Position numbers and translations under genes: made by a program. A stretch of 54,610 nucleotides of DNA from Intoshia linei (Eukaryota; Animalia; Orthonectida): contig LWCA01000103.1 of the NCBI GenBank assembly GCA_001642005.1, positions 1 to 54,610 of the forward strand, in the 5' to 3' direction. The notes under the pieces are model-generated. The model saw nothing but the letters and a program-made list of their open reading frames with translations. It was not told the DNA's origin and did not search any database. This document shows, piece after piece, positions 3,408-47,559 of the stretch. The stretch's first letter is position 1; every line of letters starts with the position of its first letter.

Positions 3408-4586
3408 TCATGAAGACAATACATTTCACTTTCAAAAAATTATATCTTCATGATCAAAACCCCAAATTCCCCATCTTAACGTAATAAAATTCTTTTTTGT
3501 GTGTCTGTCTGTGTGTGTATTATCTTTATTTTATAAAATTTTAAAAAAATATTATTCCCAGAATTTACAAAAAAAAACACATTTCACATTTTTCCATTTA
3601 AAATAAATAACATGTTAAGTTAAAAGTTAAGCTTTCATGTTCAAAAACGCAATTTACTATATAAACCTTTTTTTAGTGAAATTATTTCATTAACAAAAAA
3701 AATTTGATATAATTAATGATCCTAAAATTGAGATTATGTCATTAAACGTTTGGGACCAACTCCTTTAAAGGATTGGTAATAGTTTATCATTTTTAGTATC
3801 ATTTTTATGCAGGATTTAATTTTTTTGATATAATTAAAATGTTAGCCTTAAATAGAGCTAGGTGCTGTTTGTACGATGTACAAAACAGTTAATCTAGTTA
3901 CTTTATACAACTAACGATATTTACAGCAATTAATAATTCATTTAATAAAAATGCAGTTTTATCATACTTCGATTTACGAAATTTTCAAAATAAGGTACCC
4001 CAAAACGAGGTTATACTGTATAAATAATAACTAATGAAAAATGCTACTGCGTTTGTTTGCTACACGTTTTTGTCAAAAAGTAAAAATCGAGAAGCTTATA
4101 AAAAGAGATTTGTATGAAAGGTTTTCTTATCAATATTTTTATTCAAACATGATTCTCTCAATTTAAATAAATTGCCTCGGAGAGCCAACAGTCAAATTGA
4201 ATATATATGGCTTTAAAAATTTTTGGATCCTCTATCGATTGTTTAATCCTGTGGTTGTCAAATTTTTTTGTTTTAGTATTTCCCTATATCTCGACTAAAA
4301 AAATTTTCCCACCAAACAAAAAATTTTTCTGATATCACCTATCGATTTAAAATATTAGAATATGACCCATAGACCTATGCACGACCCGTTAAATGTAATA
4401 TATAATTACTTAGTCGCGTTTTCAAGATAAAACAAATACAGTACATGGTACTATATGTCATAATAAAAAAATGAAATAACTTAACTATATTTTCATTTTT
4501 AGAAACCTATATTCCTTGTATTTATCGATTGTCTTCATCAATTAATAAACCAGTACTCATCAAAATTTGAATATAACGTATATTTT

Positions 4587-5975
4587 TTGATTATGATTTG
4601 GGATTCTATATCTAGTGGATTACACATTGAATACAACTGTGACAGTTTCGAAGATTTGACAAAACAAATAAATAATTTAAATATGCTAAATGAAAACCAA
4701 GCAGAGAGTCTACGCAGAAGAGCACATGAATTGAACATAAAAAGTGAAAAATATATAACCTATCCAAAATTATTCAGTCTAACAGAACGATTTTCTCCAA
4801 AGCAGATACTGTTGTTTAAAAATCCATTGTACATATTAACATTGTACGAAACTGAACTCAGCCTCGTAAATAAAAGTAGAAATAATTCAAACCTTAGTTT
4901 AGGATCTAAACAACAAGTGAAGAAACCCATCAAAGATTCGTGGATTAAACAAAATTCCTCTCAAAGTAGTTATGAATCCAAATCAACAAGTTCAGTTTCG
5001 CAAAACTATAGCGAAAATAAAAGTTTACATCAAAATACATCCGGAAATGAGAGTGGAGATGAAACCATATTTTTAAATAAAACTAAAAATAAACAAGCCA
5101 ATAAATTATATATTGCATCAGAAGACTACGGAGAAAAATTGAAGAATAATAATACATTGGAAGATTTTAAAAAACGTTTTCTACACAAAACTGATTTATT
5201 TAAATTACTACACATGGAAAAATTTTCAACCTACGGAAAAAGAATACAGGATGCATTTTTTAAATACGGAATTGTACGAAAAAGCGACTATGAAAATTTT
5301 TATCTACAACCAAATCGTATATATGATGGGAAAAATACTTTTTATTTATTAGCTAATGCCAATATCCCCTATTTAAAGTTTTTTTATATTTACTTTTTAC
5401 GATGGAATCCTAAGTTGCGTATACAATATTTTGAAAATGGTTTATTGTATCAGGAAATGTGTATATTATCCAATTCAATCAATGAACTTCTGAATATATT
5501 GGTAAAGAATAAATTCAAAATTTATGACCAACAAGTTCAATTGCCGAAATATAATCGAGATTTTGTCCGAAAATATTACAAAAATCAAATTACTCCAGAA
5601 ATTGAAGATAATGAACCATCATGTGGTTTGTCTAATGGGTTTCAAATTTCTCAATGCTTTTCACCAGATTTTAATAAAATACTAGATTGGAAGTGTCTTA
5701 CTGGCTTTCCCATTAAAACCACCTCAGCTTTTCCATTTTTATGTCCAATGGAGCGAGATATTCATAGTACTATAACGGCTGTAAAGTATAATGCACCAAC
5801 ATTCATAAAACAGGAACATAATCCCTATTCTGGACATGTTAGGAGCCTGTCTAATATCAACAAAAAACAATACATTTTAAAATCATGTGTTATCCAAGAA
5901 AATCTTCCAAACGAATTTCCTCAAAACAGTTCTAATCTTAATAAACTTGAAAATAAACAAAATTATGATTTGTAA
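4587..5975 (+). CDS. Hypothetical protein (462-aa ORF; probably the terminal exon of a spliced gene)
   Basis: A long ORF in very AT-rich DNA is unlikely by chance; Ser/Asn-rich central linker; possible acceptor near 4503; no recognisable domain. Confidence 0.6.
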   Translation: MIMIWDSISSGLHIEYNCDSFEDLTKQINNLNMLNENQAESLRRRAHELNIKSEKYITYPKLFSLTERFSPKQILLFKNPLYILTLYETELSLVNKSRNNSNLSLGSKQQVKKPIKDSWIKQNSSQSSYESKSTSSVSQNYSENKSLHQNTSGNESGDETIFLNKTKNKQANKLYIASEDYGEKLKNNNTLEDFKKRFLHKTDLFKLLHMEKFSTYGKRIQDAFFKYGIVRKSDYENFYLQPNRIYDGKNTFYLLANANIPYLKFFYIYFLRWNPKLRIQYFENGLLYQEMCILSNSINELLNILVKNKFKIYDQQVQLPKYNRDFVRKYYKNQITPEIEDNEPSCGLSNGFQISQCFSPDFNKILDWKCLTGFPIKTTSAFPFLCPMERDIHSTITAVKYNAPTFIKQEHNPYSGHVRSLSNINKKQYILKSCVIQENLPNEFPQNSSNLNKLENKQNYDL

Positions 5976-6386: not shown

Positions 6387-9300
6387 TTAAAATTTAATTA
6401 TTTGTATAACATCATCATTTGTGCATATTTTTATGTCCGATTGACGAATTATACTACGACGTCGAAGTGCATCATCATAGAATGAAACTTTTCGTTCTGA
6501 ATTTGCTATTGATAGCTCATTATCATTGTTTTTTTTTGAATTTGATTTTGAATCATCTTTGACGGGTGGCTTATATGATGATCTCAAAGTTAAGCCATAC
6601 ATGTATATCTTGAATATGAGCATGCATATAAAGTCCATTATTTCAAAGAGTGATAAAACTGAAAGACCTGTAAACAGTCCTGCATAACCACCCATTTCAC
6701 CTAAAATGTATTTATAAAGATTTTGAATTAAGCCACTAGCTTTATTAACTTAAATCTAATCAAAATTACTAAATCACGAAAATCTTAGAAAAATAGCAAG
6801 TTTACCAAATTTAAAAAAATACACACTGATGAGTTTGCAACTATTTGAGTTATCCCAAACTTATACATAATTTTATGTGTTATGCTACATACATAACTTA
6901 TTTATCAAGTAAAAGTTGATTAAAATGTGTCTGTGTGTAACCATTTATTGAGATGGCTGATAGTCCGAAAGATGAGACCTTTACGGTCAAAACCTAAATT
7001 ACCCCTAATATTTATATTTAAAAAAAAACACAAATTCTCAGACATTTTTTTAAATCATTACATTACCATAAATTTTTGAAAACTAAATTATAAAATCTTA
7101 CTTAAAAATACATCTATTCCATATCCAGGTGATTGCACAACCGTTTGCTTTCTGAATTGTTTAAAGTAAATGTCAATTTTCATAAAATTTCGACTAAATA
7201 AATAATTATATTATTTAAAATATTTTGTGGAGACCGTGAGATTCAAATAAAATTTAAAAATAATTTTATCAATTTTTGTTTAATTTTATTGGAGAATTTT
7301 TAATAATTATTACAGTTTCCAGATGTTTGAAATTTACCCGAAACCTAGAAGACTGCTACATTATTATTTAAAAAATCCTACTTTTATCCCACCTTTAATA
7401 AAATTTAATAAAAACTACCATTTCAAACCCTCAGGTAAAAATTGATTTTGCCTAATTTAATCATACCCAACATAAAAATCCAATTTTACCAACCATTAAG
7501 CAAAAAATCTGATTTTTGACAAAAATTTTATAAGAAACCTAAAAAAAATTTAATTTACTTTAATGGAAAAATCCCCTTTTTCCAATATTTTTTTCAAAAT
7601 ATGATTTTATCAATGTTTAAGAAAATATCGTCTGTTTCCAATATTTTTTAAAAAAATATAATTTTACCAACAATTAATGAAAAAATCTCAATTTTTCCAA
7701 TATTTTAATATTTATAATATCTTATGAGAAAAACCTTTAATTTTTTCATAAACATTTTATATTTCATGTTCCCATTGGGATACAAAAATATTTTGAAATA
7801 AGGGTTCGTACACTATTTGGATCGGAAATCACTGCTCTAGAGAATAGACGTCACCGAACCTACCAATTTTGAAACTCCAAAAAATCAAAAATAGATCCCA
7901 AACAAAATTTTTGCAAATGATGGGTTATGGTATATACTAGAGTTCTGCATCGGATCGTGTTGAGGTGATACATGTACGTGTATGTAACAACCAAAGGAAA
8001 AATTTTAGTCCGAAACACGATACAAACACGAAATATGAAAAATCCTTCAACACGATTAAAATTTAATCAAAAATTAATTAAATTAAAGATTAGTTAGTTG
8101 AAAAACTTTAAACACGAAATATAAAAAAATTTCAACACGATCCGAAGTTCGTGTTCGTGACCAATTTTTTGAGGGTCAGGAGTCCTGACTCAGCACTTAA
8201 ATCCTAAATTTGATACACTTATAAATTTTTATAATGCGGAATTTGGAAAAATCAGCATCTAATTTACAAAAATTTCTCGTCTCTCGTTACAGTAGATTCG
8301 ACTCTGCTCGGATAAGCACATTCTTTTCGAATAGCGTTTAATAATAATAATAATAAACTAATATAACGTAATCAGGGTTGTGTAGAGGAGTTGGGGCATA
8401 TTTCCAGGTTTACAATCATGGGCCTACTTAAATTTATTAATAGGTAATGATTAAAAATTTATTAAGTATACCAAAATTATCGTAAAATAAAATGATCTAT
8501 TAACAGTCGTATTGATTATTTTTAATTTTTAGATAATGAACAATCGATAAAGCAATGTTTAGAGGTCGCATGTTTTAAAAAAATTTGTTAGGGGCCTACT
8601 CCTGGCTCTCCACGACCCTGAACGTAACTTGCAAGCCTGATAACTCGATATAAAAAATTTGTATTTTTCAAACTAAAGGGTGTAAATAATATCGAAATAG
8701 ACTAAACAATAACAAGTTTATCATGATCTGGATACAATCTTATGATGCATCGTAAGTTTAGATTCGCATAATACCATATTACATTTTTGCACAAGATTTT
8801 CGAAAAAATCGACACACTAATGTGCAGTTTCTGTATTAAATTCACAATGTAAATATTAATAGGAAATGTCAATAATAAATAGAACTTACGATATAAAATT
8901 GGCATCGAGAGCAATTTTTTTGAAGTAATCATTATACGAGAAACCAATTTTAACAAATCTAGAGGTAATAATTTCTTCAACAGAACTAAGTTCATTAGAA
9001 AAACTATTGAGAAGAAGGTTGATTTTATCGGTATAAAGAGTCAGAGATTCCAAAATGATATATTGTGCATTCTCTAGAAAGTCATCTAGCGGTGTTTCTC
9101 TCAACCAAATGGACCACAATGGAACTTCCTCGTCAACATTATACTTGGTAGTGTCTTCTAAACTAGGAGAAATTTTGTTCCAAATCATGAGCTCTGTTAT
9201 ATCCGAATAAAAATACCCTGAACCATGATACTTTTCCAATTCACTTAAATTTTCCAACGCATTCATGTACCCTTCAGAAATGACGTGAATTATATCATTA

Positions 9301-12300
9301 ATGGAATTGATAAATTTATAAATTGTTGTAACCATAGATAATTTCAGATCTTTGACAGAATTATACCCATTTTCTGCATAATTATCGGTTATAAAATGTG
9401 TCATTATATCTACTTTGTTGTAATAAGAATGTGAATATCCCTGTATTTTATCCAATAAAATTCTGTACGCAGAAAATAAATCTTCTTTAACATTTTTAAC
9501 AGACATAGACGGTTTAGCATTTTTTATGGCATATTCTACATTTTTAAAATTATTTTCTTGGTCCATTTTAATGGAATTGAGTTTATTGATGTATTCGTAT
9601 AGACAAGAATCTACCTTTGGATATAATGTATAATACATACTGCTCAGTATAAAATAATCCATATAGTTTTTCTTGTTTGTAACTTTTGATAGGTTGATTA
9701 GTGTAGTTGAAATTGTACCAAACAAATTTGTATGATTTCTCATGACCATTTTGCAATCCTCCATAATGAAGAATTTTAGTGGTAGGTATTTTAAAATGTT
9801 ACGATTTTCATATTTTAAATCTATCTTTAATTTTACATTATTTTTTTCTAAAAACACCTCAGAGTTGTATTCATCCATCAAGTTTTTACCTATCGAAATT
9901 TTTGCTAGGATTTCTTCGATTAGCACAGGTAAAACTTTATCTTTTTTCAAGTTGGTGTTTATAATATTTTTAGATATTAAATCTATCTTTTTCAGATAAT
10001 CCCAAATTTCATCACGATACAGTTTGATAACATGCAATCTATCTGCATACATTTTTTGAAAAGTGTATATTGATTTATCCACGTCTAAATTGATGTATTC
10101 GACATCGTTTTTGTAAATATTCATTAAAGTAATCATGTTGAGCCATAATTGATACACTTCAGATGATTTTGCGTCTTCTCCGCCCATTTGACGCACTAAA
10201 CCAATGAATCGTTCAAACCTGTTTTTCATGTCTGTCATGAGAAGTAGTAAATCAGCAAACGTATCACCTTTTATTCTATCTGATGTGTCGATTGCCTTAT
10301 TGTATTTGGCTCTTAATTCATCTTTTCCGTCTTGTAATATTGTATTCACGCTATTTTCAGACAACGCGGCGTACGATAGACTTGTCTCATAACTTATCTG
10401 CTTGCACGGTTTCGGGCATATACATGTTGTATTTTTCGATTTTTTCGAAAAAGGTAAGATACAATCGTAAACTTGTCTCAGATTACAAGTATCCACTCGA
10501 TAAGTTTCATTAATGTTTGGCGGCATGTAAGCATCTCTGCATTTACATTCCTTGACTAAATTTATAGTTTCACAGTCCCTCGTACAACCGGATAAACTGT
10601 AATAATCGTAGTGAGTAAGATTTTTTGTGCCACACGTGTCCCACGGTTCCGGCAAATTGGAATTTTCATGCATTAAAACCCCTGACAATGCATGTGTGCC
10701 TGGTGAGATTGCAAACCCTAAATCTCTAATTCTAGGAATTTCATCTGAACCATGCAAAATAAGTTTGACACCTGCATCAGAATTCAAACCTCTCATATAT
10801 TCGTATTGTTCAATATTCAGTGTCAAACTAAGACCAAATTGAACTCCTGATTCAGCTGTTTTATTGTTTTCCAGTATAAACGTGTAGCATCGACCATAAT
10901 CGGTTTGTATCGGCAAAAAATTTGAAAAATTACATGGCATTCCTTGCCACGTACACCCGAAAACCATATCCTTCAATTGATGCGACGTTTTATTATATAT
11001 TTCTTGCAAGGGCATAAAATGAATTTGTTCAGAATATTTCCATTTTGGTATAGGTACATTCTCCATCTTTAAATCCTGATCAACGACAATTGATTTTTCT
11101 GCATACAGAGTACTGTTTTTACAGTTTGCATATATTTCATCGTCGAAATAAGCACAATTACTAATTTTATCGCACATAAATTCTACTGGTATACAAGACA
11201 TGGTTCCAGAACAAGCCACGTTATCATATGCGCATTTTTGAGGTTTACATTTACCGGGATTCAGATTTAAATCATCTATGGACGCACTGAATCCTTCTCC
11301 GTATAAACTTATGGAAAGTTTATATTTCCCTTGTGGAACTGTAAACTGGCCTTTTAGCCAATAATCAGTGTGAATTGCACGTATCTCCCATTGTGTGATT
11401 GAATTGTTATAGTAAAATTCCATTCCTAATTTGTTTTTCAAGTCATAAATGTTATAAATTTCATCCTTTGTCAAATTTGTTGTATTTGCGTTTGAATAAT
11501 TACTGTACATATAAAGGGTATCATTAAAATTTTCTTTTATTGTGTTCTTTTTATTAGTATACAAATTAAATCTTAAATAGGCATATGTATTTGGAGTTAT
11601 GCGTTTCATGTTGTAGTAGAATGTCAAGCATTTAGGCGTGTCAATTTCTACAAATTTATTGGTTGTTATTTCCAAATCGTACTTTTTGTTTTTATCCAAC
11701 ATGGTTGATATGTAATATCCTCCTAAATTATTTTTTATATAGGTATACTTATATTTAAGTTCACTGTTATTCCGCATCCTGGTCATGACGGGGAGAACGA
11801 ACAAGGCGTTGCGAAATTTTAGGAAATGAAAATTTTAAGACCTACAAAAATTCGTCCCTCTATTATCTCATTCATCCAAAATAAGCATTTCAAAAATTAT
11901 ATTTTTGAGTATTATAAATATGGTGTGTGTCTACTGTAGTAATAAAAAATTTGGCAGAGACAAGTGGTCCCTCTTATGAATCACTAGATTATGTGTAAAT
12001 GTTTATACGTGTAGCAAAAATACTTTGTAAAATAAAATTACTTGGATTACTATTATCGGATTGTGGACTTTTAATACGCAGCCAAGAATTTGTGGAATTG
12101 ATAAATCCAAAATTGCACAAAAATTCATTGTTAAAATTACAGTTGAAACTCTTGAATTTTTCTTGAACTAAATAAGTTTATTTACAGTTACTTAATTTAA
12201 AAACATAAGGAATGACTGGAACCTGGTCTAATCCTTATTTTATTGCAATAAATGATCCAACACTCACAATAAAATAATGATTTGATATGTATTTGATATT

Positions 12301-15300
12301 ATCTGTTATTAAACTTTAATAACAGACAAAAAAGACAAATTAAAATAAAAATAACTAATTAATTTACATTTCTTTAATTTAAAGACATGTTATAATAATA
12401 CTGTTTTTATTTATTGTATTGATGTTAGTACGATAGGTATAGTATTATATGTTTATTATTATTATTTAATTAACCTGAATTGATATGTTTCTTATAAGAC
12501 GTAGTTTTAGTAAACAGCAAGATGTCGGCAATTTTAACAACTCCATAAGTTGATTGATAAATAAATTTAAAAACAAGTCGTATCTCCCCGGCTTCCAATT
12601 TAATATTTGATTTGTGCCATGAAGCTTCAGAATCAGCAAATTTGACAGTAAATAAATGAATTTCTTCTTTAGTAGATTCATCAATTGATGCGATTTCCAT
12701 ATTCATGAATTTTACATAATAGTCAAACAACAACCAGGATACATTTTTGTTTTTATAGACTGGAGATATAAATTTTATCCAATCATTTGCGTAAACCACA
12801 TTATCTGGAGCAACATAAGATTGAACAATATGTTTTTCTAAAATTAAAAAATGATAAAAAAAAATTGAAAACTAAAATTTAATTATATAAAACCCTGAAA
12901 CGTTCCACATCTTAAATTCACATATCTCAGGTTGGAACTTTCATAGTTGAGAAACAAATTAATAACAATATACAATAATACTAATTTTTTACCTGTATTA
13001 TTGAGCATTCCATCTTTGAAGTAAGCATAATCATTTTTATTGTCAGCAACTATTAGTGTTCTATTCAAGCTCAAATGTAAATTGGACACATAATATCGAT
13101 ATCCACATGTATCTTCATCCGTAAATGCGCAATTTATCCCTAATGGTTCGTAAACTAAAAAATTCAATTTTAGTCAAGTTTAACGGATAAATAGAACAGA
13201 TAAATATGATAAATTATATATGTGAATACGTCACATTGCTAGATTGTATGAAAATATTTTTTAGAAGCCTGTACTTATATAAAATTGAATGTCTGGTGTG
13301 TCTGTGTTTGTCAATGTGTTACCGTATATTTAACAAATTGACAATCGTAGAATGTAAATAAACCCTATTTCTAATAAAAGTTTTCCTAGGGCATGTCTAC
13401 ATATATTTTTCAGTGCCAGAATTTGAGTCCTTCAGAGTGAAAAACCCACTTTGCCCTTTTATTTTAAAATAAACTCAGCCTAAAAATTTAATAAAACCAT
13501 ATATGCTGGTATGCGTTTTAAAATCATTAGGATTGTCGGTAATCTCAGCCTCACAAATGTACAAAGTTATGGTTAAAACCACAAATAACCCTTTTATTAA
13601 AAATGAAACATGTCAAAAAAAATTATAAAACATCAATTATGGTGTAGTTTTAAAAACGATAAGCATTGTTATATATCTCAACCTCAAAATTGTGTATAAT
13701 AACGATCAAAACCACAGATAAGCCTTTTTTTAAAAAATGAAAATAGCCTTAAAATTTAAAAAAATTACAGTTGATACAGCTATATATGTATATTCTATTA
13801 CTATAAAAATTTTCAATCTGAAAAAGTGACGCCTTCACGCTCAAAAAAGCACATTAGTATTAATTTTTTTTCGAAACAATTTTAACAATTTATCACTTTA
13901 TTACGAAACTACTATGAAAATACCGGTATTTACAATTTTATTTTTTATGGAATTTAAGCAATTTATGAAAATTTTTAGGATTGTATGGTTTGACTTTATT
14001 TTTAAGATTATACACTCATTATTTCTAAAAATTAAAAAAATGGCATCAAAAATTGTTTATTCCTTACACAAATGTTTACAAAATAAAAGTAAAGGGGATT
14101 AATTCACTTTATAGTAAAAGATAATGTGAAATGACCGGTACTCAGTGAAAAAATTTTGCAACCACTCCTTTAAAGGATCGATAATAGTGAATAGTAGCAT
14201 TTTTAAATTGGTTAATTTATTTTCATTAATTATCTTATTTTCTTATTGAATTGATTTTTTTGGGTAGAATTAAAAAAGTCTACCCTTGACAGAGCTATGT
14301 GCTCTTTGTACAACGTAATTGGCTTTCAAGCTAGTAATATATAAAAAAATGAATATGTATCAATAAAATTACACAAATTCCTAGCAGTAACAGCTTGAAA
14401 GGAAATGGTTGATTTGACAGACATGGTGGTATATTCTGTTGTTTGTCCTGTTTGAGTGGTACCCGTAAATTTTTTAGTAATTACGGTAGTGGACTCATCA
14501 ATATTAGTAAAGTTGATAAAGTCTGCAACCCTTTTAAGACACATTGGACAAATTCTATAATAAGACCAACAGTGATTATATATATCATGTTTTTCCGTAG
14601 ATATTACATCATCATTTTTCTGTTTCGGTGAAACAGTGGACATTGTAGTAGATGATTGCATTGATTCAGGAGTATTTGGTTTAATCTTTACGGTAGAGTT
14701 TGCCTTAACGGTAGTAGGATTTATAGTGGAAGGCATGGCGGATGTAATTTCTTGAGCCGGTGGGTGTTCACAATCTCCAAACGTAATATTTGTAACATAT
14801 ATTACAGCATTTTTATCCGCTAGAACGGCATCAAAGCGTAAATGAAATGTACCACTAGGTAAAGCTAAAACTGTAAATTGATATTTAGCGAAATTAAACC
14901 CATGTATTTTACACAATGGAACGACTTTGAATGGATTATCCTTAGTAAACTTAGACACGTAAAGAGAAGAACCTTTTGTGACGTTCATTAACATTCTCAC
15001 GCAACCTTCATGCGAATTTATTTTTACGTTTTTATCTGTTTTTGTATTCTTTTTTCCAGCAAGATTTTCAACGTTAAATTGAAATGATGTTACATTATTA
15101 GAGACATTCATTAACGGTAGAATGAGAGTTGCAATGTCTCCTTCGTTAGCCTGTTTAATATCAACACCCAAAACATGTTTATTATTTATTGTTTGCCGTA
15201 CCCATTTCACTTTACTTTCACTATCTAATTCATACCCACATAAAAATGTGCTATTGAATGAACATACAAGATTTGGAGTAGCTAAAATAGATTTTATATA

Positions 15301-18300
15301 AATATTAGTAGAAATAAATACTGCAATGCCATTCGTCTTCACCATTCGGACAATCTTTTATACCGTCACAAAATAGACTTTTTGATATGCAAACTGATTT
15401 TTTTCCAGAACATCTATGTATGTCTTTTCCTTTTGGACAATCTGTATATGTGTGTATATAAAATTAATCAATATTTTTCAAATACTGTTAATTACTCGCT
15501 GTATTTATTTCTATAAAGTTGTAATGGTAGATATGACTCTATAGGGAAGATTCTGACATACTTTTTCATTTAAATAATAAAATAAACATTTCACAGGGAG
15601 TGTAGTTGTAAATTTGACTTTGTGTTTTGAAAAAAATGTATTATTTTGACATTTTAATCTCTTAATTACTTAAAATTAAATGTCTGTGTGTCTGTTACAG
15701 TATATTTAAAAAATTAGCAGTCTCAGAATTTAAAAAAACTAAATTTCATATACAGTTTTTGTAGGGGATGTTGAAATCTATATTTAAAGTTTCTAAGGTG
15801 ACCACAACTTCGTTTTTTTCGCAACACCGAAAAACGTACTATTATCAATTTAAGTTTATTATGTATTTAATTTCACAATAGAATATTTCATTTTGTACTA
15901 AAGAAATGTAATTAAAATTTTGTAACTAAGTAATTATTGTGAATTGTGAATACATTGTTAGTACAAATGTACGTTTTTAGTACGTTTTTATTCTGGTCGC
16001 TCTATATTATTAACTTATTCTAATATTATTATTATTCTTATTTACTAACTTATTCTACTTTGTTGTAATAGTGAAGTTACAGTAACAGTTCCAACTGAGT
16101 TGTAACTTCACTTTAATATTAATAAACTTAGTTGAGCATGTGTATTTTATCGATAAATTATAATGCCACATTCGGACCTTAAATCTACAAGATTCCTTCA
16201 GATTTAATAATCTATCTTTCATTCATTACCATTACATACTTTGATGAAAAAACTGATTTATCGTGTTATTGTAGAATTTTTTAAATGATGACAGACATAA
16301 TATTTAAGATAATTTTACCACAAATTTCGATAGAACAATATTCTAAATCATATTTGGAATTGTTCTAAATTATATTCTAAAAATTGAGTATGAATTCATA
16401 CTGTGACACACCAAGCACCATTCTTGTCGTCATCCGGATTTCTACAATAATTTTTTGATATCGCAGTGTCGTTGACTAAATTTCTCTTATCCGTGTATAA
16501 CCACATCATATCAATCATTTTTCTGGGTATATCATTCCAAGCAATGCACGGTTCTCCGGACACAGTTATATTTTGTTTTCCAGTATAATCTGTACCAAAA
16601 AAAGAAGTGGCACACGTCGCTATTAAAAAATAACAAAATTTTAGATAATTTTAAATTACACTAGAAAGACTGAACCCTTTCTAATGTTAAATAATTAGAT
16701 TATACACTTACTATTTTGACATTTCCCAATTTTAATATCATCAAAAACTGAAAAAATTCCCCTTTTCCCAATGGATGAGTGACTTGCTTCTATCACTATT
16801 CGATAATAGCCTGTTGGAATATTTATCTGTACTTGAGACCAATAAGAATGACCTTCTGTATTACGTTCCCAAAGTGTATTCATTGAATAATCTCTTTCAA
16901 GTGTTTTTATTGATAGTTTTCCAGATAATATTTGATAGTATAATGACAAACAATTGCTTCCATCTGATAGTATATACGGCGATCTTAACTGAGCTTTACG
17001 AGTCTTTTGAATAAATGTATCCATTGTCATCATGTATGATCCATTAGCTAAAATAAACTGTAATATTATGGCAAAAAGCAATTCTCACTCATCTCTGAAT
17101 AGTGAAATATGCTTATATCACAAACTGTAGATGATCACGCGTTAACCACGTTGAAAACCACAAATTTAAACCCTTAAATAAAAAATAAGTATACTCCTTA
17201 AAGTGGTATGATCGTAATGTGGAATAAATTTATTTATCAAATTGTGACTGTCCCATGAAACTCGTTGCCATTTCACGGCTGCTGTGATGATGTTATCAAA
17301 ATTACATTTATCTTGCTTAAAATCACATTCTAACGTCTTAAAAACTAAAATGATGAATAATTAGTTTAAAAATATTTAATCAACCTCGACATTTTTTTCT
17401 TCTGTAATAATTTACATTGTTGCGTTTTTCCAGTTTTAACGATCCAGAATTAAAGTCAACTGGCGTTATATAGCAAACGTTTAAATTGTAGTCAAAAATC
17501 ACAGAACAACATGTATCGTTTTCTATTTCCAGGCAGACGGATTTACACACATCTATGGAGAGATCCTTACTATATCATTAATTAATAATATGAACATTAT
17601 TACAATCTATTATATATTCATAATAAATTACTAGTATAGCCGGGCTTGATCATTTCCAATTAAATCGGTTTCCGTATAAATGTCAAAAGCTGTGTGGATC
17701 TGTTCGATTTTGTCTACTTTAATACATTTATTAAAATAGTATTAATAAAAATAATGAGATTTAAAGTGTTACATTGTTGCACAAGTCAGGAACATTTAAA
17801 ATATAACCATCTGGCAACATTAATTTTTTAATAATATAAATGCATCGTATCGCAAAATAATTAATAATTAAATAATTTAAACTAACCTGTACTATCGTTG
17901 TTGGAAAAACTATTGTTACTGGAATATGCGTTTTGTAGAATGTTAAAAACTCCCAATTTTTGAGCTGCCGTGAGTCTGAAAATTGAAAATATAACATTAT
18001 TAACAATCGGTATATTCAGGCATATCAATACTACACAATAATAATACTATTATCAATACAAACCAGTGATTTCCAACCGTTTGATTCTTTTGGTATGAAA
18101 TAAACTAATGGAGAAGGGCTATTTCAATGTATCATTGCAATGACGATAAAATTTTTGAAAAAATATTGAAATCCCCATTTATTAAAAACTTGCGGTTAAA
18201 CTAAATTCTTTTCTTGAAAAAACTCCGGTACGTGTTACTGGATATATACCGTTAGATTTAGTTATATTTAATATTAATTTATTTTTATCTGAGATATGAA

Positions 18301-20370
18301 CCGCCCATGGGCCGTTAGTTGGAAAACGCTTAAATAATTTATAATTAAGTAATAGTTTTTACCTAAATGTATTTTGATTACATATCGTTACTCTAGGAAA
18401 GTCTATTGAGTCACTATCTAATGTTTAATTAACGTTATATAAAATTAAAAGATATTCAATATACTAAAATAAATTATAATTATTTATTCATTCTCTTCCA
18501 GTAATATTGAAAAATAAATTTCTTTTATTAATTTGTCAATTTTCAATCTAACTCATAGAAAAATCAATTTTTTTAATACATGTACGTTTGTACATTTATT
18601 ATTGTTTCAACACTTTTTGAATAGTTTTTGTAACAATTTAAAATTCATTGTAATTCAAAAACAGTAAATAAAAATTATATCTGAGAATGGATCAATCATC
18701 ATAAGTGGCTTATCACATAAATTTAAATTTATATACTACATTATGTATATAAATAATGTGTATAGCAAATGAGTAAATTATTTATTACACAAAATTTCCA
18801 CGTTGACGTTCTTTGGGTAAGTGTACATAAACATCAGTCGGCTTACAGTCATATATATAAGTATTATCCAAAAGGTTGATACGGTTAATAACCATATTAA
18901 TCTAGTTTTAAAATATACATGTATACGAGATTTCAATATTACAGACAACTACATGCATGTAGAAAAACTAGGTTGACTGTTATGTACTACGTACAAACAG
19001 CAGCTAGCTCTGCCGAGGGCAGACGTTTTAGTTTAAAGACCAATTTTTTAATTTATTATATAATATGATTGTATGATTTTAAAAACAATCAAATTATACT
19101 ACAAGTCGAACAAATCTTCATAAATAATGATTTTAAAATAGCTATCAGATTGTATATCCTTTTAAATCCTCGTAAAAAATTCTAGTTAACAAATAATGTC
19201 AGTTTGTTATTATTTTTTATTTTGTACTTATTTATAAATTATTATAATTAATGTATCAAGTTAAAAAATTAATACCAAAATGATTTTTAGACCGAGAAGA
19301 CGTCACTTTGTGAGATTAAACTTTCCGTGTGTTTTAACATGAGATAACTGTATATTCTGTAATTTTTGTTCAAAGTTTAAAATTATTTTCATTTTTAATA
19401 AAAAAAGGGTAATGTGAGTTTTTATTCGTGAAAATGTACTTTTTTGAGATTGCGATTTATGATAATGTTATTATTTGTAAAAATATCACTCAATTTATGT
19501 TTTATAAAATTCTAAGTTTTTTTCATTTTAAATAAAGGAGTAATGTACGGTTTTGGTCTAGAATGTTTTTGAATAGCTTTTTGAAATTGAAATTTATAAT
19601 GTTCATGATTTTAAAATATTATCAGTGTGCATATTTTTTAAATTCTAGGTCTCTTTGATTTAAAAAACAGATAATTGCGGTTTTTGACCGTTAACATATA
19701 AATAAAATAATAATTTTCGTGATTAAAATAATTTATCAATTTAATTATTACTGCTACCATTACATAATCATTAGAAATCTTCAATATTACCGTATGGTAT
19801 CCACCAAATATTTGATAAATTTTTTTTAGAATTTAAATTTTGTGTAAGCTAGCCTGCTCACGGTAGAAAAGTTTAGAAACATAACTTCAACGGGTTAGTT
19901 AAAGTGAATGTTAATATGTTGGATAATAGTGACGTGTTTATGTATAATTAAATTTAAAAACTTGATTGCAAAATTAAAATCATCCGTTTTTAACAGAGTT
20001 CCCTCCTCATTTAACTATCGTTTGTACCAAGTATAAAACTATCAATATATTCAATATTCACTACTAGATTCTAGTGTATTATCTTGTAATCTAAAACTTG
20101 TTAAATCTCGAAAAAATATAAATTTAAAGAAAAAAATATTATTTTCGATGATTATCAAATTTTAAAAAAAATCAAAGATTCAAGAAATATCTACAATTAT
20201 AAATACATCTAACCGTCGTATTTTGTAGTCTTCACGGTTTCCAACGTATCTTAAACCGCAAACAGAAACCTCCGAACTAAAATTGCATAGTTCATCGTTT
20301 ATATTAACTACAATTAAAATTAAAAATCATAAAACTACATTAATCATAAAGTTGTACCTTTTGGCTTCAT
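6387..20370 (-). CDS. Giant multidomain DEG/ENaC (ASIC/FaNaC-like) ion channel subunit, ~21 exons, ~2100 aa: TM1 - PAN - MAM - Kringle - LDLa - MAM - S/T stalk - MAM - MAM - LDLa - DEG/ENaC palm/thumb - helical insert - TM2
   Basis: Manual GT-AG exons with consistent phases: 20358-20370, 20214-20307, 18789-18901, 18363-18417, 17887-17975, 17773-17810, 17632-17699, 17385-17569, 17195-17344, 16712-17047, 16402-16619, 16319-16364, 15322-15441, 14373-15281, 12993-13154, 12475-12837, 12205-12227 (least certain), 12042-12150, 8890-11722, 7102-7193, 6387-6700. DEG/ENaC hallmarks: pre-M1 FSSEVSVCGLRYV; TM1 RLIWLLTVSTFWIILIYMTV; post-M1 FPRVTICNQN; TDYGRCYTF; GLSLTLNIEQYEY; Cys-rich thumb; CPKPC; TM2 SEMGGYAGLFTGLSVLSLFE. 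Confidence 0.9.
8373..8620. mobile_element. hAT-type MITE (248 bp) in a channel intron
   Basis: TIRs CAGGGTTGTGTAGAG/CTCTCCACGACCCTG; 8-bp TSD AACGTAAT/AACGTAAC. Confidence 0.8.
11120..13154 (-). other. MAM domains 3 and 4 and LDLa repeat 2 of the channel
   Basis: MAM3: CAFTDEDTCGY...KFISP...LLFDYYV...WHKSNIKL...IRLVFK...IADILL. MAM4: CNFNNEFLCNF...WLR...GYYI...CLTFYYNM...WLKGQFTVP.GKYKLSI...IDDLNLNPGKC. LDLa2: CAYDNVACSGTMSCIPVEFMCDKISNCAYFDDEIYANC. Confidence 0.8.
13268..14334 (+). mobile_element. Non-autonomous Helitron-like element, near full-length, in an intron of the channel gene
   Basis: Starts with the family 5' motif (T)ACTTATATAAAATT...TGTCTGTGTG and ends AGAGCTA.GTGCT.TTTGTAC...CAAGCTAG|T. 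No TIRs or TSD. The same 3' end recurs at ~3853-3896, ~6324-6368 and reversed at ~18968 and ~32102. Confidence 0.7.
14373..15281 (-). other. MAM domain 2 followed by a Ser/Thr/Pro-rich mucin-like stalk
   Basis: CSFNSTFLCGY...WVR...ATLILP...GCVRM...LPSGTFHLRFDA...VTNITFGDC, then PSTINPTTVKANST...SSTTMSTVS...GTTQTGQTTEYTT. Confidence 0.75.
15322..15441 (-). other. LDL-receptor class A repeat 1 (single phase 1-1 exon)
   Basis: DCPKGKDIHRCSGKKSVCISKSLFCDGIKDCPNGEDEWHC, with the CDGxxDCxxGxDE motif; not in the supplied ORF track. Confidence 0.9.
16319..16619 (-). other. Kringle domain of the channel
   Basis: CATSFFGTDYTGKQNITVSGEPCIAW...KNYCRNPDDDKNGAWCVT plus a 46-nt exon NNSKYDLEYCSIEIC; contains the NYCRNPD signature and six Cys. 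Confidence 0.9.
16712..17344 (-). other. MAM domain 1 of the channel
   Basis: CDFKQDKCNF...W.R...PHYDHTT..GSYM...AQLRSP...CLSLYYQ...WSQVQINIP.GYYRIVIEA...DDIKIGKC, the canonical MAM motifs, split over two exons. Confidence 0.85.
17385..17790 (-). other. PAN/Apple domain within the channel ectodomain
   Basis: Spliced translation DLCNN-IHTAFDIYTETDLIGNDQARLYYKDLSIDVCKSVCLEIENDTCCSVIFDYNLNVCYIT...VNYYRRKKC fits the PAN pattern (CxxxC...C.s..y......C...YY..C). Confidence 0.75.
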
Positions 20371-20959
20371 TGACCAGATTCAGAGTTGATTGATATTGTT
20401 TAACATATTTTTATTATGATTATCATTATTATCAAGCATAATATAAAGTTTCATTTAATTAGGTTTAATCCGTATTATAGTCATTAATTAGGATAGATTG
20501 TCCTATAGATTGTGTCAAATGTATAGAATTAAATGTTGTAATTTTTAAGCAAATTTTATTACGTTTTGTTTCAGGTCACAAAGTTAATGCGATTAATATT
20601 AACATTTGAATTTTATTTGCGAACCATTTACAAATTATATCAAGTTTACTTATTTGTTGTGAGATTTCTAGATAATGGAAACTAATTTTTAAAATTTTTA
20701 AGAGTTTATTGTATATCAAGGGTCGAGCAATTTTTTTCGTCCTCCATCCCATAAACCCTAAAAATAAAATGTTGTGTTATATCTTATTTACCAGTAATAT
20801 CAAAACTTATTACGGACTGTAAACATTAAACAACACATGTTAAATCATTTAAATTTGACCAGTCGATAGTATATATTTAAAATTTAAGTCTAAAAATGAC
20901 ATAATATTAGTATTTTATACGTTTAAATTATTTATTATATTATTTATTTATTAAATTAT

Positions 20960-21235
20960 ATTAAGGTCTGTCAAAATATTCAAAATTGAGGATAAGATAC
21001 TTTTATATTTTTCTCCATTCATTATCCTCTTAATGCACACAATATTTCCTGTTCCATTAATGCTAAAGCATCCCCAAATCATTATACTACCGCCACCATA
21101 CTTGACAGTAGGAATCAGATTTTTTTCTTGGAATTCCTCCTTTGCTTTACGGAAGATAAATCGATTAGAATTTCTTCCAAACAACTCAATTTTGGTCTAG
21201 TCAGACCAAATTATCCTCTTAAAATAATCATATTT
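20960..21235 (-). mobile_element. Tc1/mariner transposase relic
   Basis: IIWSD*TKIELFG...PTVKYGGGSIMIWGCFS..GTGNIVCI...MNGEKYKSIL, a Tc1 DDE-domain fragment with a stop replacing the E of WSDE. Confidence 0.85.
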
Positions 21236-22189
21236 ACTTGTCTGTTAAGAAAGTAATAGAATTCGAGTTTTCAAAATTTATTATTTCTATTACAGTTTTT
21301 CGAGAGTGATGTTTTATCGCAAATTTCATTTTCAGAAATTTAATATTTCAAGGTCAAAAACCCCAATTATCCTTTTTATTTAAAATTTAAACCCGTCCTA
21401 GAATTATAAAAAATCATACGCATTCTCGATGAAAAATTATTTTTAATATATCATCAACCAATATTTTTTAAATATTTCGATTAAAATAAAAATTGAAAAT
21501 GTAAATTTAATCCTACAATTTCAAAATAAACGTGCAGTGAACGTATACACATTTCCAATAAAGAAATATGGGTGAAAATCTATATAATTCATTCCTTCGG
21601 AATTTTTTTTATTGCTACGCAAATTTTAAATTCTCATTTTCAAAACATTTTGAATAAAATTTAAATATAAACTAAAAAACGAAACTAAAACATAATTTTT
21701 ATATTTATTACAATCCTTGTTTGTTCCAAAGTTTGTAATAATAAAAACACTCTACATAATTGTGTATATATTTGGCAATTCAATTTGATATATAACTTGA
21801 ATCTTGCTAAAATTATATTTTGTAATTTTTTAGCATTACCAATTTTTAAATACTACATTGAGTGTAATTAAATTATAAAATAAATTGCAAGGTGCAGTTT
21901 TATCGATATAATTTCATATTATTTAAAAAAATCAATAATTAACGATTATAAATGAATTTTATTTTTCTATTAGTTTAATTTTCAAACTATAATCGATATC
22001 GAATGATTGTGAAAGCATTTGGTATTAAATCAAAATGTAGATTTTAACTAACTACTAAAATTAAAATATCATCTGTTCACAAGTAACATTGTATATTTCT
22101 AAATATTATTGATTATGTATCTATTTGTTTTATATATCAAATTTTTATAGTTATTATTTATTTTACATTTGCGTCAACAATAAACGAAA

Positions 22190-46493: not shown

Positions 46494-47559
46494 GTAAGTC
46501 ATTTAATAATCAAATCAAGACTGCAAATGTAATCTCTACTTGCACATGTGTGAGTAAATATAACATTTTTTGAGTATTGGAGACGGGCATGGGTGGGCCA
46601 AATCAAAAATTTTAAAATTAACAATTGACTATTTACTGTTTTTTTTGTTTACAATTTTTAACTGATTTTTTTGATTTTGATAATTTTTGTTTTACATTGT
46701 ACATTAGGGCTATTCCAATTTGGACTTTGTTTTGAAATTTAAAAAAGACATGTATATAATAATATCCATTTCATTTGCTGCAGAATGATATAATTTTTTT
46801 TTATTTTTGTCATAAAAAACCTCGCGTCTTTACTTTTTTCTGTTTTCCTAACATTTTTCATAGTAATCATTTTCCGTATTTTAAGATATAACATAGATCA
46901 TGTGACACTAATCATATTAATTAAAAAACATCAATAAAAAATCGTTTATTTTAGACACAGTTCACGGACAAACTTTTCGTCGTTTTTAAAAAAAATCAAT
47001 ATAAATAAATTTTACATCATAAAAATGTATAAATTCGTAGGTTATCACTTGAGTAAACTTTATTATAATATACAGATTGACTTAGTCACAATTGCGTTCC
47101 TTTAAATTTTTTGCGCATAGAGCTGAACCTATCCAACCTGAAAAATTAAGTCTAAAAAAATTGTTCATAAACTAGGCATAGTGGCATGGCCTTAACGACC
47201 TCTCTTAGTCTCTTGAGTTGATATTATAAATTTAAAACTTAATATACCTATGATATTCAAGAATATAATTTATTAATGCTTAATTTGGAAAAATAAACCC
47301 TTTTTACAAAATTTTCATCGATGTCCCCAAAGAGAGGTTTTGGGTATGCCGCAAAATAAATATTTTGAAATACAGTAATGTAGTTCCAGAAATGTTAAAT
47401 AACATGATTATAATAATTATTTTCTGGGTAACATGACTTTTTAAAAAGTATCCTTTTGATCAGCCATCAACAGGTTTATTTTAAAATTTTGAGATCTCTT
47501 AATCAAGTGACTGCTGTTGTTCATAAATTTTATAAATACAATTTAAATTTAAATTAAAT

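What the first reader, a model, noticed from the sequence alone, without database searches (positions are those of the whole stretch)
6387..20370. Receptor-channel chimera: DEG/ENaC channel with a PAN-MAM-Kringle-LDLa-MAM-stalk-MAM-MAM-LDLa array in its finger domain
Seen: the channel's N-terminal half (pre-M1, TM1, FPRVTICNQN at 20370-18363) and C-terminal half (palm, thumb, TM2 at ~11000-6387) are separated by about 1000 aa of extracellular adhesion/ligand-binding modules, all spliceable in one frame (~2100 aa total). Known: typical DEG/ENaC subunits are ~500-700 aa trimers, and the finger region after FPxVTxCN is the variable gating region (peptide site in FaNaC, protease-removed inhibitory tracts in ENaC, tether-related regions in MEC-4). 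Inference: a trimeric channel carrying a large antenna of MAM, kringle, PAN and LDLa modules could be gated by protein ligands, cell or matrix contact, mechanical tethering or proteolysis, for example host sensing. I do not recognise this architecture from any described channel. The ORF track shows it only as unrelated fragments.
Basis: partly seen in the sequence, partly recalled or inferred. Interest (0 to 1): 0.95.

Follow-up and report, generated by a model that had tools for sequence, protein, structure and literature searches.

The report
Giant sodium channel carrying adhesion modules
This is a real, transcribed gene of the parasite Intoshia linei for a sodium-channel subunit (DEG/ENaC family) about four times the usual size, because a chain of about 1,100 residues of cell-adhesion and ligand-binding modules, plus a 480-residue helical bundle, sits inside its outer domain; relatives exist in an annelid worm, but nobody has described or tested them.

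Summary

**Gene model.** On the minus strand (20370-6387), 19 exons with canonical GT-AG borders give one 2,100-aa open frame with only two hydrophobic segments:
- pre-M1, TM1, FPRVTICNQN and finger helix 1
- PAN, MAM, kringle, LDLa, MAM, Ser/Thr/Pro stalk, MAM, MAM, LDLa
- the ASIC-like core
- the last palm strands and TM2

**Evidence for one gene.**
- MAM4, LDLa2 and the channel core lie in one uninterrupted exon.
- Spliced RNA contigs confirm seven junctions, from PAN to MAM2.
- Exons 1-5 have no RNA cover. Their link rests on reading phase, profile matches and collinear relatives.

**Relatives.** The window is a whole contig of Intoshia linei (an orthonectid).
- A paralogue on another contig and three Capitella teleta loci share the module order.
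- Molluscs, nemerteans and Owenia share only the helical insert.

**Public record.** The locus is already deposited as a 2,120-aa "hypothetical protein" (OAF70867.1). That model has a wrong N-terminus and lacks TM1 and the FPxVTxCN motif.

**Function.** Gating through the array is inference only. It is a new variant of a known channel family.

The parts
20358..20370 (-). Exon 1: putative start codon (MKPK...), 13 nt
   Evidence: Read directly: ATG followed by a GT donor. Inferred only. There is no RNA cover and no homology. The deposited model uses a transposase remnant here instead.
20214..20307 (-). Exon 2: cytoplasmic pre-M1 segment, with Cys-Gly where the family has His-Gly
   Evidence: hhalign places it on columns 11-38 of the subfamily profile, E = 1.7e-4. 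AG/GT borders.
18789..18901 (-). Exon 3: TM1 (RR-LIWLLTVSTFWIILIYMTV...PKNVNVEIL)
   Evidence: hhalign places it on profile columns 40-75, probability 93.6%, E = 2e-7. Hydropathy peak at aa 37. The deposited model reads this exon in the wrong frame. No RNA cover.
18363..18417 (-). Exon 4: post-M1 motif YSDSIDFPRVTICNQNTF
   Evidence: Read directly. It matches the subfamily consensus FPxVTxCNQNxFR. The deposited model skips it.
17887..17975 (-). Exon 5: finger helix alpha-1 equivalent (RLTAAQKLGVFNILQNAY...)
   Evidence: hhalign places it on profile columns 97-115, E = 0.006: weak, but in the expected order. AG/GT borders and compatible phase.
17385..17716 (-). Exons 6-7 (17716-17632, 17569-17385): PAN/apple module
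   Evidence: Pfam PAN_1 19.6 bits, below the 21.4 cut-off. The same module is found in the paralogue and in Capitella. The 17632|17569 junction is seen in an RNA contig.
16712..17344 (-). Exons 8-9 (17344-17195, 17047-16712): MAM domain 1
   Evidence: Pfam MAM 50.6 bits, E = 2.5e-13. Junctions 17385|17344, 17195|17047 and 16712|16619 are in RNA contigs. The deposited model lacks 37 aa here.
16319..16619 (-). Exons 10-11 (16619-16402, 16364-16319): kringle
   Evidence: Pfam Kringle 38 bits on the exon and 59 bits in P0002. The 37-nt intron is confirmed by RNA.
15322..15441 (-). Exon 12: LDL-receptor class A module 1
   Evidence: Pfam Ldl_recept_a 32.9 bits in P0002. Junctions 16319|15441 and 15322|15281 are in RNA contigs.
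14373..15281 (-). Exon 13: MAM domain 2, then a Ser/Thr/Pro-rich stalk (aa 672-804, 35% S+T+P)
   Evidence: Weak Pfam MAM match, E = 0.0072. Family HMM first detection E = 1.5e-5. Composition. Covered by RNA contigs down to 14400 and beyond.
12475..13154 (-). Exons 14-15 (13154-12993, 12837-12475): MAM domain 3
   Evidence: Family HMM E = 7e-8 at first detection. Aligns with the first MAM of Capitella P0001. Borders reproduce the deposited model.
11260..12167 (-). Exon 16 (12167-12042) and the start of exon 17 (from 11722): MAM domain 4
   Evidence: Weak Pfam MAM match, E = 1.6e-4. Family HMM E = 4e-4 and 9e-4. Aligns with the second MAM of P0001.
11120..11249 (-). Within exon 17: LDLa module 2 (six Cys, degenerate acidic cluster)
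   Evidence: Pfam Ldl_recept_a 18.6 bits, below the 24.1 cut-off. Aligns with the LDLa of P0001.
10359..11021 (-). Within exon 17: channel core (beta-ball, palm, Cys-rich thumb)
   Evidence: Pfam ASC 157 bits. The AlphaFold2 model matches ASIC1 structures, Foldseek E = 1.2e-10, about 30% identity. It lies in the same ORF as MAM4 and LDLa2.
8890..10358 (-). Within exon 17: all-helical insert of about 485 aa between the thumb/beta-10 and the last palm strands (knuckle position)
   Evidence: AlphaFold2 gives long helices of 50-66 residues, mean pLDDT 71-76. No specific fold match. Homologous to the insert in Capitella. Homologues of 800-1,000 aa in molluscs, nemerteans and Owenia have their ASC match split at the same place. 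Three RNA runs hold 0.88 of the sampled words of 8889-11834.
7102..7193 (-). Exon 18: last palm strands (RNFMKIDIYFKQFRKQ...)
   Evidence: tblastn with Capitella P0001 and P0046. Borders reproduce the deposited model.
6387..6700 (-). Exon 19: TM2 with G-L-S filter (EMGGYAGLFTGLSVLSLFEIMD), cytoplasmic tail, stop at 6389-6387
   Evidence: tblastn with the Capitella proteins. Hydropathy peak at aa 2008.

Best explanation
It is one 19-exon gene of Intoshia linei for a 2,100-aa DEG/ENaC subunit.

**Shown.**
- The polypeptide has two membrane helices and an outer part of about 1,950 aa.
- An array sits after finger helix alpha-1: PAN, MAM, kringle, LDLa, MAM, Ser/Thr/Pro stalk, MAM, MAM, LDLa.
- A helical bundle of about 485 aa sits at the knuckle.
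- Every module is bounded by phase-1 introns, the mark of exon shuffling.
- The same order recurs in a paralogue and in three Capitella genes.

**Inferred.**
- It assembles as a trimeric Na+ channel, like other family members.
- The three arrays act as built-in binding or tether arms for matrix, cell-surface or soluble protein partners.
- Pull or binding at the finger is passed to the thumb and palm, and so to the gate.
- This is the site where peptides act on FaNaC and where proteases act on ENaC.
For: - **One ORF joins array and core.** Exon 11722-8890 holds MAM4, LDLa2 and the ASC core (157 bits) without interruption.
- **Complete open frame.** The 19 exons, all GT-AG, give a 2,100-aa frame. 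Eleven of them, including the first exon of each of the seven array modules that starts at an exon border, begin in phase 1.
- **Topology.** Only two hydrophobic windows.
- **RNA.** Contigs splice at seven predicted junctions from exon 6 to exon 13. The same runs hold 0.88 of the words of the stretch 8889-11834.
- **N-terminal exons.** They fall on successive positions of the subfamily profile.
- **Pore and core.** FPRVTICNQN, the GLS filter and the conserved Glu and Asp of TM2 are present. The core model matches ASIC1, Foldseek E = 1.2e-10.
- **Paralogue.** G000:C1252 has the same order, with Pfam support.
- **Capitella.** P0046 and P0153, and the locus of P0001, are collinear. Each genome locus holds a TM1/FPAVTICN exon upstream.
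Against: - No RNA contig covers exons 1-5, so the TM1-to-PAN link is not seen directly.
- Exon 1 is a guess.
- The pre-M1 His-Gly motif reads Cys-Gly, and the filter's middle residue is an unusual Leu.
- No current, ligand or expression site is known.
- Array-bearing relatives were found only in Capitella, so the comparative base is narrow.
- The C. elegans EGF-plus-ASC proteins (EGAS) gave no currents in oocytes (PMC10424705). A fused module is therefore no proof of a working channel.
Confidence: 0.6

Rival explanations
1. The array is a regulatory cap that is cut off. Proteases would remove or open part of the finger insert and so switch the channel on, as furin and other proteases do at the GRIP domain of ENaC.
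For: [quoted passage not shown]
- A basic cluster ends the PAN module in four loci: YYRRKKC in the window, YYFRRRRV in the paralogue, FFRRRRC and YYRRTEC in Capitella.
- The Ser/Thr/Pro stalk is a likely exposed linker.
Against: - No cleavage is shown.
- The basic cluster lies next to a conserved Cys and may simply belong to the PAN fold.
- The array has none of GRIP's inhibitory tract features.
- Conserving about 1,100 aa of folded modules seems costly for a mere plug.
Confidence: 0.17
2. The protein is mainly an adhesion or uptake receptor, and the channel scaffold serves only as a trimeric membrane anchor, with little or no ion conduction.
For: - His-Gly reads Cys-Gly, and the filter is GLS rather than GAS/GGS.
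- MAM-plus-LDLa arrays are typical of non-channel receptors such as MALRD1, which was hit by the array region at E = 1.1e-7.
- EGAS proteins gave no currents.
Against: - TM1, FPxVTxCN, the thumb cysteines, G-x-S and the TM2 Glu/Asp are all kept, in both Intoshia copies where seen and in all three Capitella genes.
- That conservation is hard to explain for a mere anchor, least of all in a 41.6-Mb genome of a much simplified parasite (PMC6543705).
Confidence: 0.15
3. There are two products. The array exons would form a separate or alternative transcript, and the channel with TM1 would skip them (exon 5 joined further downstream).
For: - RNA contigs stop at 17708 and do not reach exons 1-5.
- Array modules are phase 1-1, so skipping them keeps the frame.
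Against: - MAM4 and LDLa2 cannot be skipped, because they share an exon with the core.
- Exon 6 begins at an AG acceptor, with no start codon or signal peptide.
- The RNA contig ends only 8 nt short of that acceptor, at low depth.
- Five loci in two species keep TM1 upstream of the same array.
Confidence: 0.07

Closest known systems
Capitella teleta CAPTEDRAFT_191217 (P0001), CAPTEDRAFT_202568 (P0046, UniProt R7VBR3) and CAPTEDRAFT_202570 (P0153): uncharacterised predicted proteins
   Same: - Same order: TM1/FPAVTICN, PAN, MAM, kringle, LDLa, MAMs, ASC core, long helical insert, TM2.
- 33-37% identity in the core.
- 191217 is nearest to the window gene; 202568 and 202570 are nearest to the Intoshia paralogue.
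   Different: - 202568 and 202570 also carry a CUB domain, and have a stalk in place of LDLa2 before the core.
- The Capitella proteins keep His-Gly.
- The JGI models skip the FPAVTICN segment. The 191217 model is cut in two, with a gag-like gene (Pfam PEG10 capsid) called on the other strand between the pieces.
Lophotrochozoan DEG/ENaC subfamily of 800-1,000 aa, for example Lineus longissimus XP_064628199, Haliotis asinina XP_067658355, Pecten, Ostrea, Owenia
   Same: The ASC profile is split after position ~393 by an insert of about 450-500 aa, at the same place as the helical insert here. Core identity is 32-40%.
   Different: Ordinary short finger. No MAM, kringle, PAN or LDLa found.
ENaC alpha/beta/gamma with the GRIP domain (PMC6197857)
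   Same: An extra domain is inserted in the finger after helix alpha-1, at the periphery of the trimer, where it controls gating.
   Different: GRIP is a small beta-sheet with inhibitory tracts removed by proteases. Here the insert is about 1,130 aa of independent adhesion-type modules.
C. elegans EGAS-1 to EGAS-4, 'EGF plus ASC domain ion channels' (PMC10424705)
   Same: A DEG/ENaC fused in one polypeptide to an extracellular adhesion-type module.
   Different: EGF only; no MAM, kringle, PAN or LDLa. The position of the EGF module was not checked here. No currents were obtained in oocytes.
MEC-4/MEC-10 touch channel with extracellular MEC-1, MEC-5 and MEC-9 (from my own knowledge)
   Same: A DEG/ENaC thought to be linked to extracellular matrix proteins built of adhesion modules.
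   Different: There the matrix proteins are separate gene products. Here the modules are part of the channel subunit.
MALRD1 / MAM and LDL-receptor class A domain-containing proteins
   Same: Alternating MAM and LDLa modules. It was hit by the Capitella array region at E = 1.1e-7.
   Different: No channel domain; single-pass or secreted receptors.

Membership tests
DEG/ENaC (Pfam ASC, PF00858) | Match to the ASC profile above the curated cut-off | tested here: met
   157 bits against a cut-off of 23.6, profile positions 128-391, on exon 17.
DEG/ENaC (Pfam ASC, PF00858) | Two transmembrane helices flanking one large extracellular domain | tested here: met
   Only two Kyte-Doolittle windows of 1.6 or more, at aa 37 and aa 2008 of the 2,100-aa reading. 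The TM1 exon fits the profile at E = 2e-7. TM2 aligns with the Capitella proteins.
DEG/ENaC (Pfam ASC, PF00858) | Post-M1 motif FPxVTxCN | tested here: met
   FPRVTICNQN in exon 4.
DEG/ENaC (Pfam ASC, PF00858) | Pre-M1 His-Gly motif | tested here: not met
   Reads Cys-Gly (SVCGLRYV). Gly is kept and His is replaced. Capitella P0046 has LHGLRY. The motif is conserved in the family, but I do not take it as strictly defining.
DEG/ENaC (Pfam ASC, PF00858) | G/S-x-S selectivity filter and conserved acidic residues in TM2 | tested here: met
   GLFTGLSVLSLFEIMD, so the filter reads G-L-S. The subfamily consensus is GAS.
DEG/ENaC (Pfam ASC, PF00858) | ASIC-like fold of the beta-ball, palm and thumb | tested here: met
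   The AlphaFold2 model (pLDDT 76.5) matches 4fz0, 7rnn and 2qts at E = 1e-10, with about 250 aligned columns and about 30% identity.
DEG/ENaC (Pfam ASC, PF00858) | Trimeric assembly and amiloride-sensitive Na+ current | not testable with these tools
   Needs expression and electrophysiology.
MAM domain (PF00629) | Profile match above the cut-off | tested here: met
   MAM1 scores 50.6 bits against 26.4. MAM2-4 fall below the Pfam cut-off as single exons. A HMM built from the family's own strong MAMs detects them at E = 7e-8, 1.5e-5 and about 5e-4.
Kringle (PF00051) | Profile match above the cut-off | tested here: met
   38.0 bits on exon 10 alone and 59 bits in P0002, against a cut-off of 34.3.
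LDL-receptor class A (PF00057) | Profile match above the cut-off | tested here: met
   LDLa1 scores 32.9 bits against 24.1. LDLa2 scores only 18.6 bits. LDLa2 has six Cys and aligns with the LDLa of P0001.
PAN/apple (PF00024) | Profile match above the cut-off | tested here: inconclusive
   19.6 bits against 21.4 and 19.1 bits in the paralogue. The segment is conserved in all three Capitella loci.
ENaC GRIP domain | Small beta-sheet with a protease-removable inhibitory tract between finger helices alpha-1 and alpha-2 | tested here: not met
   The position is the same, after alpha-1. The insert, however, consists of Pfam adhesion modules, not a GRIP-like sheet. This is a likeness in site only.

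The most novel reading that the evidence does not exclude
The finger array and the knuckle bundle would make this the first DEG/ENaC with its own built-in extracellular tether or protein-ligand receptor. Binding or pull on MAM, kringle, PAN or LDLa arms, assembled by phase-1 exon shuffling, would directly open a trimeric Na+ channel. This ancient annelid invention has been kept in two copies even in the stripped-down orthonectid genome.
Probability: 0.3. Interest if true: 0.85.

Novelty: new variant of a known kind. Interest (0 to 1): 0.63.

Why it matters
How force or large ligands reach the gate of DEG/ENaC channels is an old open question. In the nematode touch channel the supposed matrix tethers are separate proteins and hard to study. 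Here the candidate tether or receptor arms belong to the channel subunit itself, at the finger, the region where peptides and proteases act on other family members.

The family has members in Capitella teleta, whose DEG/ENaCs have already been expressed in oocytes (PMC9234716). The idea can therefore be tested with and without the array.

There are three further points:
- The gene is a clear case of exon shuffling into an ion channel.
- It is a shared derived trait that fits the placement of orthonectids within annelids.
- It shows that the public gene models are wrong at the N-terminus in Intoshia and in two of the three Capitella genes.

Tried and rejected
**Searches that gave nothing**
- Pfam on the short TM1 and TM2 exons alone found nothing. 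Profile comparison exon by exon did work.
- The ESM Atlas search of the helical insert gave no usable hit.
- Foldseek on the insert alone gave a best E of 0.013. VIA-align gave a best Z of 11.0, under the noise level of about 13 that the tool gives for helical bundles. So there is no specific fold relative.
- Rfam on the whole window gave no match.
- Literature searches for ASC with MAM or kringle, for Intoshia ion channels and for Capitella DEG/ENaC found no description of this architecture.
- Word-based protein searches found array-bearing relatives only in Capitella. They are limited in reach, so this does not show absence elsewhere.

**Ideas dropped**
- An early guess that the genome is a flatworm's, prompted by earlier notes on micro-exon genes, was dropped once the deposited protein named Intoshia linei.
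- The joints 19535>20375 and 19020>19441 and the very high depth at 18965-19035 are set aside. Their sides are only 21 nt, their ends are not canonical, and the place is a dispersed repeat.

**Steps not taken or limited**
- Complex prediction was not used, since a trimer exceeds its size limit and no binding claim rests on it.
- My own joined (spliced) protein went to no search or fold tool. It was put together only inside scripts to count length, phases, hydropathy and composition and to compare with the deposited model.
- All searches used single exons by reference or database proteins.
Full report
**What is in the sequence.**
- The window is very AT-rich, 22-33% G+C.
- Between 20370 and 6387 the minus strand carries a row of open segments that read as parts of one protein.
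- Pfam finds ASC (amiloride-sensitive sodium channel) at 157 bits in the 982-aa open segment 11834-8889. Weak MAM and LDLa matches lie ahead of it in the same uninterrupted frame.
- Pfam also finds MAM (50.6 bits), kringle (38 bits) and a near-threshold PAN_1 in upstream segments.
- Read directly, the upstream end holds four elements in order:
  - a pre-M1 segment, ...FSSEVSVCGLRYVGNREDYKIRR;
  - a TM1 exon at 18901-18789, LIWLLTVSTFWIILIYMTV...PKNVNVEIL;
  - an exon ending at 18363, YSDSIDFPRVTICNQNTF;
  - an exon at 17975-17887, RLTAAQKLGVFNILQNAY.., which matches the first finger helix of the subfamily.

**Gene model.**
- Nineteen exons, every one with an AG acceptor and a GT donor, give 6,303 nt: 2,100 codons and a single terminal stop.
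- Hydropathy shows only two membrane-like segments, at aa 37 and aa 2008. About 1,950 residues therefore lie outside the cell.
- The layout of the protein is:

| Residues | Element |
|---|---|
| 1-36 | N-terminal tail |
| 37-55 | TM1 |
| 80-89 | FPRVTICNQN |
| 93-121 | finger helix 1 |
| 122-212 | PAN |
| 212-374 | MAM1 |
| 374-462 | kringle |
| 462-502 | LDLa1 |
| 502-671 | MAM2 |
| 672-804 | Ser/Thr/Pro-rich stalk (35% S+T+P) |
| 805-980 | MAM3 |
| 980 to ~1175 | MAM4 |
| ~1177-1220 | LDLa2 |
| 1256-1476 | channel core |
| 1477 to ~1960 | helical insert |
| 1967-1997 | last palm strands |
| from ~2000 | TM2, with a G-L-S filter |
| to 2100 | cytoplasmic tail of about 70 aa |

- MAM2-4 are too divergent for Pfam's cut-off. 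A HMM built from the family's own strong MAM domains detects them, at first-detection E = 7e-8, 1.5e-5 and about 5e-4.
- Each module from PAN to MAM3 (PAN, MAM1, kringle, LDLa1, MAM2 plus stalk, MAM3) starts and ends in intron phase 1, and MAM4 starts in phase 1. This is the classical pattern of modules spread by exon shuffling (established knowledge, after Patthy).

**RNA evidence.**
- Three public runs of one 2024 study hold 0.88 of the sampled words of the stretch 8889-11834, which holds most of the large exon.
- Their contigs were laid on 14400-20399. They skip seven introns with CT..AC ends, which is GT..AG on the minus strand, exactly at the predicted borders: 17632|17569, 17385|17344, 17195|17047, 16712|16619, 16402|16364, 16319|15441 and 15322|15281. 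The runs are therefore cDNA.
- PAN through MAM2 and the stalk lie on one minus-strand mRNA. Introns are as short as 37-40 nt.
- One contig of 2.0 kb and one of 2.1 kb run on past 14400.
- The most upstream contig ends at 17708, 8 nt short of the exon-6 acceptor, at depth 2.4.
- Nothing covers exons 1-5. That is a gap in evidence, not evidence against the link.
- Exon 6 has no start codon or signal peptide of its own.

**Link of exons 1-5 to the array.**
- The reading phase is compatible across these junctions.
- hhalign places exons 2, 3 and 5 on successive positions of the subfamily profile: columns 11-38, 40-75 and 97-115, with E = 1.7e-4, 2e-7 and 6e-3.
- The relatives described below are collinear.

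**Whose gene it is.**
- An exhaustive protein search returned a 2,120-aa protein, 95% identical over the large exon.
- It is OAF70867.1 / A3Q56_01374 / UniProt A0A177B984, 'hypothetical protein' of Intoshia linei, on a contig of 54,610 bases, the length of this window. The genome of 41.6 Mb in 3,520 contigs fits that species.
- So the locus is already annotated. The deposited model has four faults:
  - it starts with a Tc1/mariner-like remnant (21329-21002; I recognise the motif, and Pfam found nothing for the 81-aa piece);
  - it reads the TM1 exon in the wrong frame;
  - it skips the FPRVTICNQN exon;
  - it lacks 37 aa of MAM1 that the RNA contigs include.
- As deposited, the protein therefore has no TM1.

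**Relatives.**
1. *A paralogue in the same genome.* It lies on the minus strand of G000:C1252, 13.4-34.6 kb, in this order:
   - TM1 plus KFPSITICNHNMYR in one exon (ASC, E = 6.8e-10);
   - PAN plus MAM in one exon (MAM, E = 9.4e-12);
   - kringle (E = 6.5e-11);
   - LDLa (E = 7.7e-12);
   - further MAMs;
   - core, helical insert and last palm strands.
2. *Three Capitella teleta genes.*
   - P0046 (CAPTEDRAFT_202568, 1,980 aa) and its tandem neighbour P0153 (202570, 1,933 aa) carry ASC, MAM, kringle, LDLa and a CUB domain, in the same order, with TM1 at the N-terminus.
   - P0001 (191217, 1,275 aa) is a truncated model. In its locus L001 a TM1/FPAVTICNQNLFR exon (867-1040), a PAN exon (1650-1832) and a kringle (3781-4218) lie upstream. 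A gag-like gene (Pfam PEG10 capsid) is called on the opposite strand between them and the model.
   - In the P0046 locus the genome reads ...NESLMFPAVTICNSNKYR in the TM1 exon, a segment that the JGI model skipped.
3. *Two old lineages.* By summed tblastn bits, 191217 is nearest to the window gene (484 against 187). 202568 and 202570 are nearest to the paralogue (382-426 against 253-297). This suggests two old lineages, each with members in both animals. It is a rough measure; no tree was built.
4. *A wider group without the array.* Proteins of 800-1,000 aa from molluscs, nemerteans and the annelid Owenia have an ordinary finger. Their ASC match is split after about profile position 393, and the total lengths leave room for an insert of about 450-500 aa there. 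None of the 150 best representatives outside Intoshia and Capitella has a MAM domain.

**The second insert.**
- AlphaFold2 on the core plus insert (alignment A1, 34 sequences) gave a mean pLDDT of 76.5. The core is ASIC-like, and Foldseek matches 4fz0, 7rnn and 2qts at E = 1e-10 with about 30% identity.
- From the end of the thumb onward the model is made of helices up to 66 residues long.
- The insert alone (A2) gave pLDDT 71, all helical.
- Neither Foldseek (best E = 0.013) nor VIA-align (best Z = 11.0, below the helical noise level of about 13) gives a specific relative. It is a long helical bundle of unknown kinship, placed where ordinary channels have the small knuckle.

**How it most likely works.**
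- *Shown:* a two-TM DEG/ENaC polypeptide. It keeps FPxVTxCN, the Cys-rich thumb, G-x-S and the TM2 Glu and Asp. It carries a large modular array after finger helix 1 and a helical bundle at the knuckle. The design is conserved in five loci of two species.
- *Inferred from the family* (solved ASIC, ENaC and FaNaC structures): three subunits form a Na+ channel, so three arrays and three bundles would crown the trimer.
- The finger is the known control site. [quoted passage not shown]
- MAM, kringle, PAN and LDLa are protein-binding modules of receptors and matrix proteins (general knowledge).
- My best reading, at about 0.6, is a channel whose arms bind matrix, cell-surface or soluble proteins, with binding or pull at the finger biasing the gate.
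- The rivals are:
  - proteolytic unmasking (0.17), prompted by the shared site and by a basic cluster at the end of PAN in four loci;
  - a receptor that only uses the channel scaffold as an anchor (0.15), prompted by Cys-Gly for His-Gly, the odd G-L-S filter and silent EGAS proteins (PMC10424705);
  - separate or array-skipping transcripts (0.07).

**Comparison and novelty.**
- It is a member of DEG/ENaC: all tested defining features are met except the His of the His-Gly motif.
- It works 'like' ENaC only in where the extra domain sits, and 'like' the MEC-4 complex only in the idea of a matrix link.
- C. elegans EGAS proteins show that module fusions exist in the family, but with EGF only.
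- I found no paper that mentions ASC together with MAM, kringle or PAN. Nor did I find one on these Capitella or Intoshia proteins.
- The sequences themselves are public as unnamed predictions.
- I therefore rate it a new variant of a known kind: real, conserved and undescribed, but not unseen.

**Limits.**
- Exon 1 is a guess.
- Exons 1-5 and 14-19 have no junction-level RNA support.
- The reach of the protein searches is limited.
- Function is wholly inferred.
It was used only inside scripts for counting and for comparison with the deposited model.

Noticed in passing
window 18965-19035: A dispersed repeat of 55-70 nt lies in the intron upstream of the TM1 exon. The genome search gave over 2,000 first-look candidates, and the 40 that were scored are 90-98% identical. 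RNA contig depth here is very high, up to about 2,000, with many different flanks. Rfam has no match. Its nature (MITE end, SINE or other) is unknown.
   Followed up: partly
window 20954-21329 (minus strand): A Tc1/mariner-like transposase remnant (...KYGGGSIMIWGCFS...) has been taken as the first exons of the deposited gene model OAF70867.1. Pfam found nothing for the 81-aa piece at E <= 0.001, so the call rests on the motif.
   Followed up: partly
G000:C1252:13400-34600 (loci L002-L004), minus strand: A second giant DEG/ENaC gene with the same module order. TM1 and FPSITICN share one exon, and PAN and MAM share another. It is closer to Capitella 202568/202570 than to the window gene.
   Followed up: partly
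L001:867-4363 and L005:4305-4480 (Capitella teleta): The JGI gene models are faulty. 191217 lacks its upstream TM1, PAN and kringle exons; a gag-like gene (Pfam PEG10 capsid) is called on the other strand at L001:7503-9094, between those exons and the model. 202568 skips the FPAVTICNSNKYR segment that the genome encodes in the TM1 exon.
   Followed up: partly
window 15282-15321, 16365-16401, 17345-17384: Introns of only 37-40 nt, confirmed by RNA contigs. They are among the shortest spliceosomal introns in animals.
   Followed up: no
window 4587-5975 (+): A 462-aa ORF without any Pfam match, convergent with the channel gene. Its end lies about 400 nt from the channel's stop codon.
   Followed up: no
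window 25789-26436 (+), 37432-38184 (-), 30698-31672 (-), 44560-46497 (+): Neighbouring genes: a CUT-domain protein (E = 2.3e-24) and a NAP/SET-like nucleosome assembly protein (E = 4.2e-12). There is also a 324-aa ORF with several long hydrophobic stretches and a 645-aa Cys-rich ORF, neither with a Pfam match.
   Followed up: no
window 14823 and 14965: Two single-base differences (G>T, A>G) between the assembly and the RNA contigs of all three runs. They are probably strain polymorphisms.
   Followed up: no
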